This document shows, piece by piece, positions 681 to 53,082 of a stretch of 64,000 nucleotides of DNA. A program made the position numbers and the translations under genes. The notes under the pieces were generated by a model that was given only the letters and a program-made list of their open reading frames with translations, made no database searches and was not told where the DNA came from. The first letter of the stretch is position 1, and every line of letters starts with the position of its first letter. The stretch comes from Obrimoposthia wandeli (lineage: Eukaryota): NCBI GenBank assembly GCA_977020255.1, contig CDROCS010000985.1, positions 1-64,000 of the forward strand, written 5' to 3'.

Positions 681-800
681 AATTCACAGGACACCCTTCT
701 TAAAATACTATTAAAAATCATCGGCGCTGCTCTACTTTTATTAAGATTGAACTCTTCCTATTGGTGTAGTGATATTTTATTTAAAGTGGGTGTCTAAGTT
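681..800. repeat. REP/REPIN-like inverted doublet (GGACACCC ... GGGTGTC)
   Basis: GGACACCC at 689-696 and GGGTGTC at 788-794, inverted with a ~90-bp spacer, starting exactly where the attC breaks off. Confidence 0.4.
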
Positions 801-880
801 AAATCTAAGTTAAACCATTTTTGATTGTTAAAAGAAAATAATCCAGTTAGAGTATTTTTATTAAAAATTATATAAAAAAC

Positions 881-898
881 GAGTAATTCTACAGGCTC
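881..898. mobile_element. Isolated MITE/IS terminal inverted repeat abutting a cassette GTT core
   Basis: GAGTAATTCTACAGGCTC; its reverse complement matches the left end of the 1424-1600 element at 16/18 nt. AATTCTACAGGCTCGTTA is identical at 885-902 and 1587-1604. Confidence 0.65.
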
Positions 899-1623: not shown

Positions 1624-2082
1624 ATGCATCGCATTATAATTTTAACCTTATCTGTTCTTTTTTCTTGTGCCGTAATAGCTGATACAGCTATTGATAGTAA
1701 AAATATAAAACGAGCTGTACTAGATTACATAGAGTCGCAACACAAAGTCGAACCAGAACTAATGAAAAGGGGTTTAGATAAAAAGTTAGCTAAAAGAACT
1801 TACTGGGAATCTAAGGACGGCTCAGAGATTATAATGGAGACCAATTTTGAAACGATGGTGTGGGTGGCTGAAAACTACAACAAAGATGGTAATAAATTCC
1901 CGTCATCTCCCAAAGTTGATGTCAACATACTCGATATTGATAATCGAGTTGCATCGGTAAAATTAACAGTGGATGATTGGATCGATTACATGCATTTATA
2001 TAAAAATGAAAATAACGAATGGAAAATAATTAACGTTTTGTGGCAATACCATGATACGAAAAAACATTCGAGTAAACCGTAA
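1624..2082 (+). CDS. Secreted NTF2-like (putative lumazine-binding family) protein, cassette gene
   Basis: Signal peptide; C-terminal ASVKL...DYMHLYK...WKIINVLW pattern. Cassette opens GTTAGCT (1601-1607) and closes AGCTAAC (2082-2088), exact complements. Confidence 0.75.
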   Translation: MHRIIILTLSVLFSCAVIADTAIDSKNIKRAVLDYIESQHKVEPELMKRGLDKKLAKRTYWESKDGSEIIMETNFETMVWVAENYNKDGNKFPSSPKVDVNILDIDNRVASVKLTVDDWIDYMHLYKNENNEWKIINVLWQYHDTKKHSSKP

Positions 2083-2149
2083 GCTAACAAGGCAATTAAG
2101 CGGAACTAAACAACTTAACTATGCCACCCATCAAGTTATCATGGGTGGC
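2082..2149 (+). mobile_element. attC left arm truncated by a GCCACCCAT/ATGGGTGGC hairpin
   Basis: AGCTAAC-aaggc-AATTAAGC-ggaac, then a 9-bp stem at 2123-2131/2141-2149. No matching right arm or GTT core. Confidence 0.55.
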
Positions 2150-2187
2150 CTGATAAAAATTTGATAAAAATTGCAAGTGGCTTATAA

Positions 2188-2532
2188 ATGAAAAAATGGA
2201 TGGCTTCACCTCAGAAAGTGAAAATTACAAAGTCGATGAAAGACTCTGTAAGCGAAGAAGGGAGTACTCTAATAGATAATGTGCTTAAGCCTCTTTTCAT
2301 AAAACCAGAAGAAGAGAATTACTGCTCTAATCAGGTTTTTGATATCGAATTAAAGTGGCGAGGAAATTCACTATATCTTTTGGCTAAATATAATTGTTTA
2401 GGTGAAAATGCAATATCACCTACATTTGAAAGTAAGTTTGCAAAATTAGTATTTGTGGGCAACGATAAGTTCAATTTGTCCTATATGCGTCATAATGATA
2501 ATGGTGTAATTATGATAGTCGATTTGATTTAA
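2188..2532 (+). CDS. Hypothetical protein (DUF3024-like), possibly C-terminally disrupted
   Basis: 114-aa ORF with KWRG..Y and F.LSYMRH motifs. Family call from memory. Confidence 0.5.
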   Translation: MKKWMASPQKVKITKSMKDSVSEEGSTLIDNVLKPLFIKPEEENYCSNQVFDIELKWRGNSLYLLAKYNCLGENAISPTFESKFAKLVFVGNDKFNLSYMRHNDNGVIMIVDLI

Positions 2533-2592
2533 ATGCAGATATTAGTGTTGATTGTTCAACCATAGTTTTAATAGGTAACGCTTACATGGTTG

Positions 2593-2612
2593 GTATAACA
2601 AAACAGTTAGAC
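2593..2612 (+). other. Tyrosine-recombinase simple-site-like dyad (attI-like)
   Basis: GTATAAC-aaaaca-GTTAGAC: 6/7 inverted match with a 6-bp spacer; the right box fits GTTRRRY. Confidence 0.35.
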
Positions 2613-2640
2613 ATGTTTGTCGCTCCACACATTATAGCCA

Positions 2641-2846
2641 ACTTATGTGGACTCCCCCTTGTCAACAACAAAAATAATAACACAAAGAAATAAATGCGTA
2701 CTTATGTACGAGCTCTAAAATGAGAAGCTATCTCTGGCTCTTTGATATTTACGCGAACTCGTTGTCAAATCTGTTAAGCGAGCGCTAAGCTCTCTGTTGG
2801 CTACTGACTAAACGAGCTGATTTTTATCTTCGTTAGCACGGACAAA
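2641..2846 (-). mobile_element. IS1111-like (IS110 family) non-coding right end, candidate bridge/seek RNA; transposase absent
   Basis: Minus strand ends TTGACAAGGGGGAGTCCACATAAGT (subterminal-IR-like motif with a -35 hexamer). Internal 8-mers match the element end (2700-2707 = 2641-2648) and the flank (2796-2803 = reverse complement of 2635-2642). Confidence 0.5.
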
Positions 2847-3167
2847 GGGGTCAGGTCTTTCTTTTTTCACTCATTCATTATTGCTAATATTTAGTTATTA
2901 ATTTGCCAAATTTGATCGGTGAAAGGGGTGCTAGGCCGTTAAGGTCAGATTTCGCAGGTGCTTTATATCATGTTAGATCACGAGAGAATGAACGAAAGCT
3001 AATTTAGTAAGGTCGTGATAAAAAGCAAGAGCTGTCCTCTTTTACTTTTAGAAAGCCTATGACTAAACCGACAAATTAAACCCTAGATTAAGCTAGCCTC
3101 GACTGTGTAAAATTTATTACTAATTTTTCAATCAAGCCACTGAACCATTATCTAGCTTAGTTTAACT

Positions 3168-3199
3168 TAGCGCTTAAGTCGCAAGCCGATTAAGCGCTA
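3168..3199. terminator. Hairpin downstream of mnmC
   Basis: TAGCGCTTAA ... TTAAGCGCTA, 10-bp stem. Confidence 0.45.
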
Positions 3200-3221
3200 T
3201 TACACCAACACTCTCGCAGAA

Positions 3222-5239
3222 CTAATCAAACTTACGGCGAATAATGTCACGAATAACAAAACGATTAGGGGCAAGATTAAACAGTTGCTCGTTGTCTAAC
3301 GGGTAGGGCATACCGCAAATATCTGCCGTTAAAATATCGGCAAGTAAGGGGGCAGTGCAAAGTCCTCGCGCCCCTAATCCTGTCATCATGTAAAGGTTGT
3401 TAATCACTGGCGCTGGCTGGTCATAACGCCAACGTTTGTCTTTGCTCAGGTGTTGATATTGTACTTTGTGCGCGTCAATATCTGGCATAGCACCTACCAT
3501 TGGCAAGTGATCAGGTGTCATGCAACGCAAGCGCGCTTTACTACTCACCACATCACTGATTTTCCATTGGGTTAAACCTGGTAAGCATTTATCTAACATA
3601 GCAAGGTTAAACTCATCTTCTGCAGTCTTGCTGTCGATATCAACGCTATTTTTTTTGAAGGTTGCACCGATACAGTGAAGGTTGTTACTTGCTGGCGTTA
3701 AATAGCCCTTGTGGCAAATAACCGTTGCCAGTTTTGCTATTTCGCCATGGCTGGCCATATTGCTGACTTGTCCGCGTACCGGCGTTAATGGCATTTGGTC
3801 AATCACATTTAACGCAATGCCTTGCGCACCGCCACAATATATAACGACGTTGGCAGGAATATTTTCAGTATCACTGTGTAGTAGCCACTTTCCTGTTGGT
3901 TGTTGGCTAATACTATTGATTTTACAGCCAGTTTCTATACGCAGGCGATTACTTGATTCCGCCGCCTTAAATATCGCTTTAACCAATTGTGGCGGGGCTA
4001 TCCATCCGGCTTTTGGAAAAAAAAGACCACCATGATTTAGCGTAATGCCCGCTAAACTACTGGCTTGATCTTTATCAATGCTATGCAATAAATTTTCTGG
4101 CCAAATACTAGAGTCAGCGATGTGTTGTTGGCGTAACTCTAGCGCGGGCTTGTAGGATATTTCTAATAAGCCACACCAGTCATGATCATAGTGATGACCT
4201 TGCTCGCTGATGTTTTTATAAAAGCTAAGCGCTTGCTCGAATGCTCGTTGGTAAAACAGACTAATATCATCAGCCTGTTGATGAATAAGTGGGTACAAAG
4301 CGCCAATGTTGTTGCTTGATGCACCTTGCGCGACACTGAAGTCTTGACAGTAAACGGTGACTTTAACGCCACTTTTTGTCAATGCATAAGCGGCACATGC
4401 TGATGCGATGCCACCGCCAATAATGCTGACATGTTGGGGCTTAGCAATAAGAGGACGTTGTTGGTAGCCTTTGCCTGAAAGTGGGTTTTGTTGAAATACC
4501 GCGGTTAACATTTCATTTTTTTTGCCGTCAGTACTTCGCTTTTCAACACGAAAGCCTGCCGCGACTAATTGCCGCTTAACTTTACCTGATACGGTAAAGG
4601 TTGAAAGTGTAGCTTGCTCTTTTGACAAGCGAGAAATTTGCTTAAATAGTGCTTCGTGCCACATGTCAGGATTTTTAGCTGGCGAAAAGCCGTCAAGAAA
4701 CCAAGCGTCGACCATTGCCGCATGCTTATTTTGCTTAAAAGAATGTTGCGAGGACTTTGCTGGTGCAAGTGTTGCTAAACCTTGTGTGGCATCGTCAAAT
4801 ATTAATGTTAAGGTTACTGCACCGCTAAGAGCAGCACGCGAGCTTTAAAAGTAAAGTCAGCGATAAGCTGCTGACTAAATGGCGCAAGCTGCGGTAATAT
4901 TGCTAAAGATTGTGCAAGTTGCGCTCTTGATAGTGGGTACTTTTCTACACTGATAAAGTGCAAGGCGCTGACCGATGCAAAATGCTGCTGGTTTTTATTG
5001 TGTCGTATTTGATCAAATATTTGTAAGGTGAGCAAAAAGTTTAGCCCAGTACCAAAGCCGGTCTCAGCGATAACAAAGTTTTCTTGGCTTTTGGCTAAGC
5101 GAGCTCTAATATTATTACCGTTAATAAAGACATTTTCACTTTGGCTAGTACCTTCGCTGGTATCAAAGTAGATGTCACCGAATTGGCTTGAATAGGGTGA
5201 ACCATCATTTTGAAAGGTAATCTTTGCTTGTTCAATCAC
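3222..5239 (-). pseudogene. mnmC: Bifunctional tRNA mnm5s2U34 methyltransferase/FAD-dependent oxidoreductase, split by a frameshift at ~4815-4850
   Basis: N part (4814-5239) has FGDIYF and ETGFGTGLNF; C part has [15 protein letters not shown] and GLGARG. The C-part frame extends upstream of its first Met (...[14 protein letters not shown]...). Divergent from fabB as in enterobacteria. May be a sequencing error. Confidence 0.9.
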
Positions 5240-51202: not shown

Positions 51203-52036
51203 GTGAAAGCATATCTTGATTTAATGCGACATGTTAGAGACGAAGGGATTGAAAAGTCTGATCGTACTGGCACCGGCACTAAAAGTATTTTTGGTCATCA
51301 AATGCGTTTTGATCTTGCCAAGGGCTTCCCATTAGTCACCACAAAAAAGTGTCATCTTAAATCGATAATTCATGAGTTATTATGGTTTATTAAAGGTGAG
51401 TCGAACATTGCTTACTTAAAAGAAAATGGCGTAAAAATCTGGGATGATTGGGCTACTGAAGAGGGTGAGCTTGGCCCTGTTTATGGCGTGCAATGGCGTA
51501 ATTGGCCCGCTCAAAATGGCGAAACCATTGATCAATTAGCCCAACTTATCGACGACTTAAAAAATAATCCAGACTCACGTCGCCACATAATTACCGCTTG
51601 GAATCCGGCTTTACTGCCAGATACTTCAATCAGTCCGACAGCGAATGCGGCACTAGGCAAACAAGCTTTACCGCCATGTCATACCTTATTTCAGTTTTAC
51701 GTTTTAAACGGTAAATTAAGTTGTCAGTTATACCAACGCAGTGCTGACATATTTCTCGGTGTGCCCTTTAATATTGCTAGCTACGCATTATTTACCATGA
51801 TGATTGCACAAGTTTGTGATTTAGAAATGGGTGATTTTGTACATACCTTTGGTGATGCACACCTATACTTAAACCACCTTGAACAGGTTGATGAGCAATT
51901 ATCACGTGAGCCTTTGCCATTACCTACTATGTGGATTAACCCAGAAGTAAAAAGTATTTTTGATTTTACTTTTGAAGATTTTGAGTTACAAAATTATCAA
52001 GCACATCCTCATATTAAAGCTGCTATATCGGTATGA
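51203..52036 (+). CDS. thyA: Thymidylate synthase
   Basis: DRTGTGT, ALPPCH, YQRSAD, FNIASY; likely GTG at 51203. Confidence 0.97.
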
Positions 52037-52296
52037 TTTTATTGATGTAAAGCTAAAGTGTTGAATATGAAAAAGTAAACCAATAGGTTAATGCCGTTCA
52101 CTTAAGGTGCTCGGCATTTTTGGTACTGCTTTTTTGATCGGATATCTATTTTAAGTGCACTTTAATGCCAGAGGGTATTTCCTTCCTCTTCTCGATGGCA
52201 AGATATCACACGCCTGAACTTGACTGCCTATTTTTCTTAAGCCTTCATTAAGCTCTCATTGAATGAAGAGCAGCATTTAACCCATTGACATTACGG

Positions 52297-53082
52297 TTAT
52301 CGATGCAAAAGTTGAAAGCGTTGACTCATAATGAGCTTTTTGGTGTATTTATGTTTTGGTTTTTGCAATATTTCAGCTGTTTTACCAAATTCTAAAACTT
52401 TACCATTACATAGCACCATCATTTCGTCACTGAAGTGCCTGACAATACCTAAATTATGAGAAATCAATATAAAAGCTAAACCCATCTGCTGTTGCAAATC
52501 TAACAGCAAATTAATCATCTGAGAGCGCAGGGAAGGATCGAGTGATGCTAAGGCTTCATCAAGAATGATGACTTTGGGTTTTAATATAATGGCCCTAGCG
52601 AGAGAAATACGCTGTTTTTGACCCCCTGAAAACATATGGGGATAAAAACTCATGTGTTCAGCTAACAAACCAACCTTTTGCAATGTTTCTCGAATCAACT
52701 GGTGACGTTCTAATTCGTCTAGGTTGGTGTTAAGTTGCAGTGGCTCGTCTAAGAGTTGTTCTATTGTTAAACTCGGGTTTAAAGTGGTACCAGAATCTTG
52801 AAAAATCATGCGGACATGCTGGCAGCGCTGTTTAAAATCTCCGGGCGTAAACATTTCGCCATTTAAGCGAATATGGCCAGTTGTTGGCAATTCAGCACCG
52901 ACTAATAATCTGGCTAATGTCGACTTTCCAGAGCCTGTTTCACCGACAATCGCTAAAGTTTTATGGGGCATAATATCAAAAGATACGGGGTCTAAAGCCG
53001 CAACGCATTTACGATTGAACCAGTAATTTCTGTCTTTATAGGTCTTACTCAGGTTGATCACCTGCAATAACACATGACTCAC
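52297..53082 (-). CDS. sapF: Peptide ABC transporter ATP-binding protein
   Basis: GETGSGKS, FSGGQKQR; last gene of the sap operon. Confidence 0.88.
   Translation of the reverse strand: MSHVLLQVINLSKTYKDRNYWFNRKCVAALDPVSFDIMPHKTLAIVGETGSGKSTLARLLVGAELPTTGHIRLNGEMFTPGDFKQRCQHVRMIFQDSGTTLNPSLTIEQLLDEPLQLNTNLDELERHQLIRETLQKVGLLAEHMSFYPHMFSGGQKQRISLARAIILKPKVIILDEALASLDPSLRSQMINLLLDLQQQMGLAFILISHNLGIVRHFSDEMMVLCNGKVLEFGKTAEILQKPKHKYTKKLIMSQRFQLLHR

What the first reader, a model, noticed from the sequence alone, without database searches (positions are those of the whole stretch)
2631..2858. Orphan IS1111-type bridge/seek RNA candidate with guides matching its own junction
Seen: on the minus strand the segment ends TTGACAAGGGGGAGTCCACATAA-GT-TGGCTATAATG. 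ACTTATGT occurs at the element end (2641-2648) and again inside (2700-2707). The flank TAGCCAAC (2635-2642) occurs inside as its reverse complement GTTGGCTA (2796-2803). The two junction 8-mers overlap by exactly 2 nt (2641-2642). Established: IS110/IS1111 elements encode a non-coding RNA with a target-binding loop then a donor-binding loop sharing a short core, and IS1111 members carry it in a long right end with subterminal IRs. The order here (flank guide, end guide, IR) fits. No transposase lies between 2860 and mnmC. Inference: a stranded guide RNA or a non-autonomous remnant that could act with a recombinase in trans.
Basis: partly seen in the sequence, partly recalled or inferred. Interest (0 to 1): 0.75.

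Follow-up and report, generated by a model that had tools for sequence, protein, structure and literature searches.

The report
Stranded guide RNA of dead IS
This stretch is the leftover right end of an IS1111-type jumping gene that has lost its recombinase but still carries an intact guide ("seek"/bridge) RNA gene written to recognise the integron recombination site it sits in; the mechanism is known, so this is a clean new example and not a new kind of system.

Summary
Window 2642-~2838 (minus strand) is the complete 3' non-coding region and right end of an IS1111-family insertion sequence. It is 96-97% identical to the same region of full-length elements in Colwellia, Paraglaciecola and Thalassotalea. 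There is no transposase and no left end.

I collected about 80 full-length relatives. A six-helix, two-loop RNA structure is strongly supported by compensatory changes. Four guide segments were defined:
- A candidate right-donor guide lies at 2744-2750.

Target guides covary with flanks across 58 distinct elements, far above shuffled controls. The crossover core is AG (+ strand CT, 2642-2643).

The target is one arm of an attC-like site at the end of an integron cassette array. The element is a truncated relic, not a MITE. No close intact recombinase is in the assembly, but reads from the likely source sample hold fuller copies with an identical RNA region at about 5-7 times the depth. Expression and action in trans are untested.

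The scan already noted the same kind of relic on another piece of this genome (s1-217562). Verdict: new member of a known kind.

The parts
2594..2641 (+). 5' part of the last attC-like site of the cassette array (TATAAC box, then an imperfect palindrome arm). On the minus strand, 2635-2641 (TTGGCTA) is the right flank (RF) of the insertion.
   Evidence: sequence. The same kind of site flanks the relic on C3765 and full-length relatives L062, L079, L081, L067, L068. Cassette hallmark: AAGCTAAC 2081-2088 is the inverse of GTTAGCTT 1601-1608.
2642..2643 (-). Core dinucleotide AG (CT on the + strand) at the right-end/flank junction.
   Evidence: AG precedes ATAAT at the left end and follows CATA at the right end in about 80 relatives.
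2644..2658 (-). Right end: subterminal inverted repeat GGGGGAGTCCA (2648-2658) plus terminal CATA (2644-2647).
   Evidence: Nearly invariant in about 80 elements and covaries with the left-end repeat TGGACTCCCC.
2660..2665 (-). TTGACA, the -35 half of the junction promoter that forms only in the circular form (TTGACA-N17-GATAAT with the left end).
   Evidence: Sequence. The promoter logic is from PMC11187229 and PMC12288879. It cannot form here because the left end is missing.
2696..2817 (-). Bridge/seek RNA core of six helices. P1 2812-2817/2757-2762, P2 2805-2808/2764-2767, P3 2789-2792/2780-2783 (target-binding domain). P4 2751-2754/2696-2699, P5 2737-2740/2710-2713, P6 2731-2734/2722-2725 (donor-binding domain).
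   Evidence: RNAalifold. Pair counts: 96.8% paired and 16/26 pairs with double changes. Covariance model score 163.8 bits with no non-canonical pair. The MFE of the single sequence gives the same fold, z = -2.29.
2796..2803 (-). Right-target guide (RNA UAGCCAAC). It pairs with the top strand of core G plus the right flank TTGGCTA, 8/8 here.
   Evidence: Diagonal of complementarity RF+1..+6 with columns 2797-2802, 0.56-0.83 against 0.25-0.38 expected. Mean 4.40/7 against 2.09 shuffled.
2771..2777 (-). Left-target guide (RNA UUAACAG), identical to left flank plus core and so pairing with the bottom strand. It predicts a left flank ...TTAAC|AG.
   Evidence: Identity LF-1..-5 with columns 2773-2777, 0.67-0.94 against 0.28-0.39 expected. 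Mean 4.10/5 against 1.62 shuffled.
2700..2707 (-). Left-donor guide ACAUAAG (2701-2707), identical to the element's right end plus core, followed by one base (2700) that tracks the first flank base.
   Evidence: C/T covariation with the right end: 78 C/C, 5 T/T, 0 discordant, including the separate record L045. Position 2700 equals RF+1 in 45/58 elements.
2744..2750 (-). Candidate right-donor guide AAAUAUC, complementary to core G plus left-end ATAATT with one mismatch.
   Evidence: Conserved position on the 5' side of the donor loop. Covariation is mixed: L090 supports it, L106-L108 do not.
2818..2838 (-). Conserved leader (AACGAAGAUAAAAAUCA). Homology to full-length elements ends at about 2838-2841, the truncation breakpoint.
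   Evidence: Alignment with the closest full-length relatives.
2839..3221 (.). Unique spacer between the relic and mnmC, with no transposase, no left end and no repeat elsewhere in the assembly.

Best explanation
Window 2642-~2838 (minus strand) is a 5'-truncated relic of an IS1111-family insertion sequence. The element inserted by RNA-guided recombination into one arm of the last attC-like site of a chromosomal integron cassette array. The left end, the transposase gene and the first roughly 50-70 nt of the downstream non-coding region are gone. What remains is the whole seekRNA/bridge RNA gene and the right end.

The RNA folds into two domains. The target-binding loop lies between P2 and P3. 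It carries UAGCCAAC, which pairs with the top strand of the right flank, and UUAACAG, which pairs with the bottom strand of the left flank plus core. The donor-binding loop lies between P4 and P5. It carries ACAUAAG, which matches the element's own right end plus core AG, and probably AAAUAUC, which matches the left end.

The guides 'match their own junction' because every element of this family sits at the site its RNA selected. That match is the footprint of the insertion event, not a special self-targeting device.

Shown here: homology, RNA structure, guide-flank covariation, and absence of a transposase and a left end.

Inferred: the locus cannot move on its own. If it is transcribed (for example by read-through from mnmC on the same strand), the RNA could load onto a recombinase made by fuller copies present in the sample. 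It would duplicate their own identical RNA. Most likely it is a recent, functionally neutral relic.
For: - Homology: 96-97% identity over about 197 nt to the non-coding region of full-length elements L060, L063 and L062. The paralogue on C5358 lies 3' of a frameshifted transposase with a PF02371 hit.
- Family: 80 loci with an intact transposase plus this region, and plasmid copies annotated as IS110-family transposase.
- Structure: 96.8% of cells paired against 82.4% shuffled and 25-50% slid, and 16/26 pairs with compensatory changes.
- Model score: the window scores 163.8 bits on the covariance model it helped to build (its sequence was a row of the training alignment, and training rows match by construction), within the 92-168-bit range of full-length elements. 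Other relics in the same assembly score 17.7-31.5 bits.
- Guide covariation over 58 distinct elements: 4.40/7 and 4.10/5 observed against 2.09 and 1.62 shuffled, with no shuffle of 2000 reaching the observed values.
- Donor guide: 5/5 elements with right end CATATAAG have internal TATATAAG.
- Guide order (top-strand match 5' of bottom-strand match, overlapping in the target) is as published for IS1111 seekRNAs (PMC11187229).
- No transposase and no left end.
- Reads: the RNA region has depth 33-52 against 6.9 for mnmC, and one contig continues past the breakpoint with the family's upstream sequence.
Against: - No direct evidence that this copy is transcribed. No sigma-70-like promoter is predicted upstream on the minus strand. 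The only RNA-library contigs are 92-93% relatives from a marine metatranscriptome and are not shown to be transcripts.
- The right-donor guide is only partly supported.
- The pristine state of the RNA gene next to a complete loss of the transposase could also reflect selection rather than recency.
- The attC/right-end junction (2502-2633) was not covered by the listed read contigs.
- The contigs that cross the breakpoint carry only about 14-18 nt of the shared region.
- No integron integrase lies on this contig, so 'attC' rests on sequence features.
Confidence: 0.88

Rival explanations
1. It is a non-autonomous mobile module (MITE-like: left end + RNA gene + right end) that is mobilised in trans by the recombinase of full-length copies. 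MITEPpu9 (ssr9), next to ISPpu9, is the known precedent.
For: Precedent in PMC12288879. The RNA gene and right end are pristine. Fuller copies with an identical RNA region exist in the sample. The breakpoint falls neatly between the transposase gene and the RNA.
Against: No left-end sequence (AGATAAT+TGGACTCCCC) lies within 460 nt upstream. Local alignment scores are at or below the shuffled mean and no pattern hit was found. No second copy of this truncated form is in the assembly. The sequence upstream of the breakpoint does not match the predicted left flank TTAAC|AG.
Confidence: 0.04
2. It is a retained, functional trans-acting guide RNA gene, kept by selection at the end of the cassette array. 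It would steer a recombinase encoded elsewhere to attC arms, or act as a decoy or regulator of that recombinase.
For: The RNA scores like active copies while relics that still hold transposase fragments have decayed. The junction 2821-2912 is present in two sequence variants at chromosomal depth. Read-through transcripts can give functional bridge RNA in IS621 (PMC13626964). Unoccupied sites close to the programmed target remain in the array (629-642 and 660-673).
Against: Identity to high-depth copies in the same sample is explained more simply by recency. No promoter is predicted and there is no expression evidence. The RNA would be redundant with the identical RNA of fuller copies. No conserved syntenic solo copies in other genomes were shown.
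Confidence: 0.07
3. The internal ACATAAGT is merely part of a terminator-like hairpin (CGTAC-ATAA-GTACG followed by a U-rich tract), and its resemblance to the element end is incidental.
For: The terminator scan flags 2710-2697. A U-rich tract follows P4.
Against: The C/T position inside the 8-mer covaries perfectly with the right end (83/83 concordant). In many relatives the base after AAG follows the flank (C with C-flanks), which breaks that hairpin. The consensus fold places the segment on the 3' side of the donor loop.
Confidence: 0.01

Closest known systems
IS1111-family seekRNA (ISEc11, ISPa11, ISKpn4, ISPst6, ISPa25; Siddiquee et al. 2024, PMC11187229)
   Same: The RNA is encoded in the long non-coding region downstream of the transposase. 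Subterminal inverted repeats are present. Two short target matches overlap at the insertion point, with the top-strand match 5' of the bottom-strand match. ISKpn4, ISPst6 and ISPa25 also target attC sites. A junction promoter forms from the right and left ends.
   Different: This locus has lost the transposase and the left end. It belongs to a lineage from marine Gammaproteobacteria (Colwellia, Thalassotalea, Vibrio, Alteromonas and others) whose relation to the ISKpn4 group I did not test. The insertion point is ACAG|TTGG in an inner palindrome arm of a long attC-like site. The right terminal extension is CATA (4 nt) before core AG, against the usual 3 nt quoted.
IS110-family bridge RNA (IS621; Durrant et al. 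2024, PMC11208160; Hiraizumi et al. 2026, PMC13626964)
   Same: It has two loops (target-binding and donor-binding), each with a left and a right guide that share a core dinucleotide. The guides are programmable and covary with target and donor.
   Different: The RNA lies in the right end, not the left end. The guide order within each loop is reversed (right guide 5', left guide 3'). The core is AG, not CT. No Rfam family matches.
Degenerate IS1111-attC footprints at the ends of Pseudomonas integron arrays (Tetu & Holmes 2008, J Bacteriol 190:4959)
   Same: A decayed or truncated attC-targeting IS1111 element sits at the terminus of a chromosomal cassette array.
   Different: That paper is not held in the library, so the comparison rests on my memory of its abstract. 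The host and IS lineage differ, and here the RNA gene is intact rather than degenerate.
MITEPpu9 / solo ssr9 copies next to ISPpu9 in Pseudomonas putida KT2440 (PMC12288879)
   Same: A small-RNA gene derived from the downstream part of an IS110-family element occurs without a transposase. AG is the recombination dinucleotide.
   Different: Solo ssr9 copies keep both flanking boxes and can form circles, and Ssr9 is not the guide RNA. Here the left end is missing and the RNA is the guide.

Membership tests
IS1111 family insertion sequence | Encodes a DEDD/IS110-type transposase (PF01548/PF02371) | tested here: not met
   No transposase homology anywhere in the window. Homologous full-length elements have it. 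The locus is therefore a fragment of a member, not a complete member.
IS1111 family insertion sequence | Subterminal inverted repeats of about 11-13 bp with short asymmetric terminal extensions | tested here: inconclusive
   The right-end repeat GGGGGAGTCCA (2648-2658) plus CATA is present. The left-end partner is absent from the window. In relatives both repeats are present and covary.
IS1111 family insertion sequence | Long non-coding region downstream of the transposase gene | tested here: met
   Window 2642-2838 aligns with the roughly 200-260-nt region between the transposase stop codon and the right end in all relatives.
seekRNA / bridge RNA | Conserved secondary structure supported by compensatory changes | tested here: met
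   Six helices, 96.8% of cells paired, 16/26 pairs with double changes, and no shuffle of 500 reaching the observed values on any of the five measures reported. RNAalifold independently found five of the six helices.
seekRNA / bridge RNA | Two target guides complementary to opposite strands of the target, overlapping at the insertion point and covarying with flanks | tested here: met
   In the window the right-target guide matches its flank 8/8. The left flank is lost, so the left-target guide can only be compared with the predicted attC arm (AAAAC|AG against UUAAC AG).
seekRNA / bridge RNA | Donor guides matching the element's own ends | tested here: inconclusive
   The left-donor guide is met (identical to the right end, 83/83 concordant at the one variable position). 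Right-donor guide covariation is mixed.
seekRNA / bridge RNA | RNA is made and binds the recombinase | not testable with these tools
   Only contigs of a metatranscriptome from relatives were found. There is no strand or end information.
IS1111-attC group | Inserts site-specifically into attC sites of integron cassettes | tested here: inconclusive
   The flank has attC-like features, and the same site type flanks relatives and the C3765 relic, which lies about 600 bp from an integron-integrase fragment. No integron integrase lies on this contig and no attC model was available.
IS1111-attC group | Transposase groups with ISPa21/ISKpn4/ISPst6 | not tested
   No reference sequences of those elements were fetched.
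Rfam RNA families | Match to a curated covariance model | tested here: not met
   No hit over 2631-2858 even at E <= 10.

The most novel reading that the evidence does not exclude
The transposase-less RNA gene is not mere debris but a kept, expressed guide. Transcribed by read-through from mnmC, it would load onto recombinase supplied by other copies. With its intact right-end junction it could drive one-ended or inter-copy recombination that reshapes or mobilises parts of the cassette array. Alternatively it could titrate the recombinase.
Probability: 0.08. Interest if true: 0.6.

Novelty: new member of a known kind. Interest (0 to 1): 0.35.

Why it matters
RNA-guided IS110/IS1111 recombinases are under development as programmable genome-insertion tools. 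This locus and its roughly 80 relatives form a natural series of one scaffold reprogrammed to 38 distinct right-target and 33 distinct left-target guide sequences among the 58 elements analysed. That series maps which RNA positions read which DNA positions in an IS1111-type system. It also documents a second family of mobile elements that parasitises integron recombination sites in marine bacteria, and shows how such elements die, leaving a guide RNA gene behind. For this genome the finding is ordinary annotation: a truncated IS relic.

Tried and rejected
- Rfam search of 2000-3600 at E <= 10 gave nothing relevant.
- tblastn of four family transposases against the window gave no hit.
- Pattern and local-alignment searches for a left end upstream of the RNA gave nothing above shuffled scores, so the MITE reading was rejected.
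- Searches of the 1.35-Gb assembly found no close intact copy. I used the RNA-region DNA, the full IS DNA of C5358, the L060 element DNA, the L063 transposase and the covariance model. They returned only a frameshifted copy on C5358 (62-74% identical to the L063 transposase; 66-69% to the plasmid L026 one), decayed relics on C3765, C3797 and C253, and other IS1111-type elements at about 40% identity.
- The promoter scan found no minus-strand promoter. The one terminator-like hit is the hairpin around the donor guide, rejected as the main explanation because of covariation.
- The 14-nt programmed target is not over-represented in the window.
- The Tetu & Holmes 2008 paper could not be read.
- Reads could not show expression because both runs are kept as contigs.

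Full report
**Observation.** TAGCCAAC lies at 2635-2642, ACTTATGT at 2641-2648 and again at 2700-2707, and GTTGGCTA at 2796-2803. ACTTATGT occurs nowhere else in the 64-kb window. GTTGGCTA occurs five times, two of them here. The region has no Rfam match even at E <= 10.

**Setting.** The window is the first 64 kb of a 113.8-kb contig (C985) in a 1.35-Gb, 6912-contig assembly that holds many bacterial contigs. Its mnmC product is 58-61% identical to those of Colwellia, Pseudocolwellia and Thalassotalea genomes, so the host is an Alteromonadales-like marine gammaproteobacterium. Positions 1-2640 carry small same-strand ORFs separated by attC-like sites. For example, AAGCTAAC at 2081-2088 is the inverse of GTTAGCTT at 1601-1608, where the cassette begins. 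The 5' halves of these sites are related to each other. No integron integrase is on this contig. Four full ones and several fragments lie elsewhere in the assembly.

**Homology.** The segment has paralogues in the assembly. The best, on C5358, lies directly 3' of an IS110-family transposase gene (PF02371). That gene is frameshifted near the KTDxNDA motif and is bounded by TGGACTCCCCC / GGGGGAGTCCA inverted repeats. Its nearest plasmid relatives are annotated IS110-family transposases in Klebsiella, Citrobacter, Vibrio and Pseudoalteromonas. Their downstream non-coding regions align with the window over its whole length. A scan of one genome per species returned 80 loci, mostly marine Gammaproteobacteria. 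Nearly all have an intact transposase of about 345 aa, a left end AGATAAT+TGGACTCCCC and a right end GGGGAGTCCA+CATAAG. The window is 96-97% identical over about 197 nt to the region in full-length elements of Colwellia marinimaniae (L060), a Paraglaciecola MAG (L063) and Thalassotalea piscium (L062). Homology stops at about 2838-2841, some 50-70 nt downstream of where the transposase stop codon would be. The window has no transposase homology. It has no left end, neither by pattern nor by local alignment against shuffled controls. The 376-nt spacer up to mnmC is unique in the assembly.

**RNA structure.** RNAalifold on 62 sequences found five helices. I added a sixth by eye and counted pairs on a 61-sequence alignment.
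- 96.8% of cells form standard pairs, against 82.4% in shuffles and 25-50% when partners are slid.
- 16 of 26 pairs show changes on both sides (200 cells).
- No shuffle of 500 reaches any of the observed measures.

A covariance model built with this structure scores the window at 163.8 bits with no non-canonical pair. The window sequence was a row of the training alignment, so a high score is partly expected by construction. Full-length elements score 92-168 bits. The single sequence folds the same way (z = -2.29). The fold has two domains. P1-P2 close an internal loop capped by hairpin P3. P4 closes a second loop capped by P5-P6.

**Guides.** I compared every RNA column with every flank position across the family, and two clean diagonals appear.
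- Columns equivalent to 2797-2802 are complementary to right-flank positions +1 to +6 (0.56-0.83 against 0.25-0.38 expected).
- Columns 2773-2777 are identical to left-flank positions -1 to -5 (0.67-0.94 against 0.28-0.39 expected).

Over 58 distinct elements (38 distinct right guides, 33 distinct left guides) the means are 4.40/7 and 4.10/5. Shuffled flanks give 2.09 +/- 0.18 and 1.62 +/- 0.15, and none of 2000 shuffles comes near the observed values. Related elements share guides and flanks, so these are not strict probabilities. However, guide and flank change together in 64 distinct guide pairs.

The order (top-strand match 5', bottom-strand match 3', overlapping at the insertion point) is the one published for IS1111 seekRNAs (PMC11187229) and the reverse of IS621.

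ACAUAAG is identical to the right end plus core. The element ends are almost invariant, so covariation can be tested at only one position. All five elements whose right end reads CATATAAG have internal UAUAUAAG, and all 78 with CACATAAG have C there, with no exception. One of the five, L045 from a Methylococcales MAG, is a separate record from the four Vibrio copies; I did not build a tree to confirm separate lineages.

The eighth base (2700) equals the first flank base in 45 of 58 elements. The 5' side of the second loop carries AAAUAUC, complementary to core G plus left-end ATAATT with one mismatch. Support for it as right-donor guide is mixed.

The shared core is AG (CT on the + strand, 2642-2643), the same dinucleotide reported for ISPpu9 (PMC12288879).

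**Target.** Relatives with the same guides (L062, L079, L081, L067, L068) sit in ...TAAC|AG|TTGGCT... followed by a conserved CGCTTCGCT-type stretch. The same sequence forms the palindrome arms of the window's first attC-like site (629-642 and 660-673). In the window the element entered the 3' arm of the last site in inverted orientation. The expected left flank from the palindrome would be ...AAAAC|AG, which fits the left-target guide at 5 of 7 positions. The relic on C3765 has the same kind of flank and lies about 600 bp from an integron-integrase N-terminal fragment.

**State of the locus.** Other relics of this family in the assembly (C3765, C3797, C253:4178087-4178581) keep transposase fragments but have decayed RNA regions scoring 17.7-31.5 bits. 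The window copy has no transposase but a pristine RNA gene. The assembly holds no close intact transposase. The nearest is the frameshifted C5358 copy (62-74% identical to the L063 transposase; 66-69% to the plasmid L026 one). The nearest intact IS1111-type transposases are about 40% identical.

Contigs from the likely source run were laid on the window.
- Depth is 33-52 over 2634-2834, against 6.9 over mnmC.
- A 1129-nt contig is identical over 2729-2834 and then continues past the window's breakpoint with the family's normal upstream sequence.
- The junction 2821-2912 appears in two variants at chromosomal depth.

I read this as fuller copies with an identical RNA region existing in the sample, probably lost in assembly gaps. 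The truncated junction is probably real, although those contigs carry only about 14-18 nt of the shared part. An RNA-library hit from a marine metatranscriptome is 92-93% identical and says nothing about this copy.

**Mechanism and likelihood.** The best explanation (about 0.88) is a recent 5'-truncated relic. It cannot excise, because that needs both junctions and a recombinase. Its right-end TTGACA cannot form the junction promoter TTGACA-N17-GATAAT without the left end. If it is transcribed by read-through from mnmC, the RNA could serve a recombinase supplied in trans. Read-through transcripts do give functional bridge RNA in IS621 (PMC13626964). Such an RNA would duplicate the identical RNA of the fuller copies. 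The rivals are a MITE-like module (0.04, no left end), a selected trans-acting guide (0.07, no expression or conservation evidence) and a mere terminator hairpin (0.01, contradicted by covariation).

**Comparison and novelty.** The mechanism (seekRNA/bridge RNA), attC targeting by IS1111 members, and transposase-less RNA modules are all published. From my memory of Tetu & Holmes 2008, which I could not open, degenerate IS1111-attC footprints at array termini are also known. This lineage and its insertion point in an inner attC arm may be undescribed. I therefore class the finding as a new member of a known kind, of modest interest for the locus itself. The family-wide guide map is the more useful by-product.

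Noticed in passing
Family alignment; window 2700 and 2769-2770: The 3'-side guides read one or two bases into the integrated junctions. The base after ACAUAAG equals the first flank base in 45/58 elements. The left-target guide is followed by conserved AU, matching the left end's AT after the core. This may parallel the 'handshake' positions of IS621 or reflect tuning to excision substrates.
   Followed up: partly
window 3222-5239 (minus strand): mnmC is read as two ORFs (497 aa at 3222-4715 and 141 aa at 4814-5239), while relatives have one gene of 661-693 aa. A read contig differs by many substitutions and small insertions at 4824-4859. This could be a frameshift, a variable stretch or an assembly error.
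   Followed up: no
G000:C3765:51027-51284 and 51917-52982: An integron-integrase N-terminal fragment (residues 1-86, 83 bits) lies about 600 bp from a decayed copy of the same IS family inserted in the same type of attC-like site.
   Followed up: partly
L095 (Psychromonas sp. PT13 chromosome) 3232-3755 and 3756-4279: There is an exact tandem duplication of the last 524 bp of the element (3' part of the transposase gene, RNA gene and right end), giving a second transposase-less RNA gene directly after the first.
   Followed up: partly
G000:C5358 (L002:1504-2900, minus strand): A sister element has 85% RNA-region identity but different guides (GGAAACAAC / UAUCUAG) that match its own non-attC flanks. 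Its transposase is frameshifted after residue 86.
   Followed up: partly
L060 (Colwellia marinimaniae), L100: In these full-length elements the right-target guide does not match the present right flank. This suggests later rearrangement at the right junction or insertion by another route.
   Followed up: no
window 3165-3200: A strong inverted repeat TAGCGCTTAA...TTAAGCGCTA lies just downstream of mnmC, between mnmC and the RNA gene. It has partial similarity to the 5' part of the attC-like site at 2088-2111. It could be a terminator that blocks read-through or another attC-like remnant.
   Followed up: no
window 722-898 and 1424-1600: Two copies of a repeat of about 177 bp end at ...ATTCTACAGGCTC just before GTTA.
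   Followed up: no
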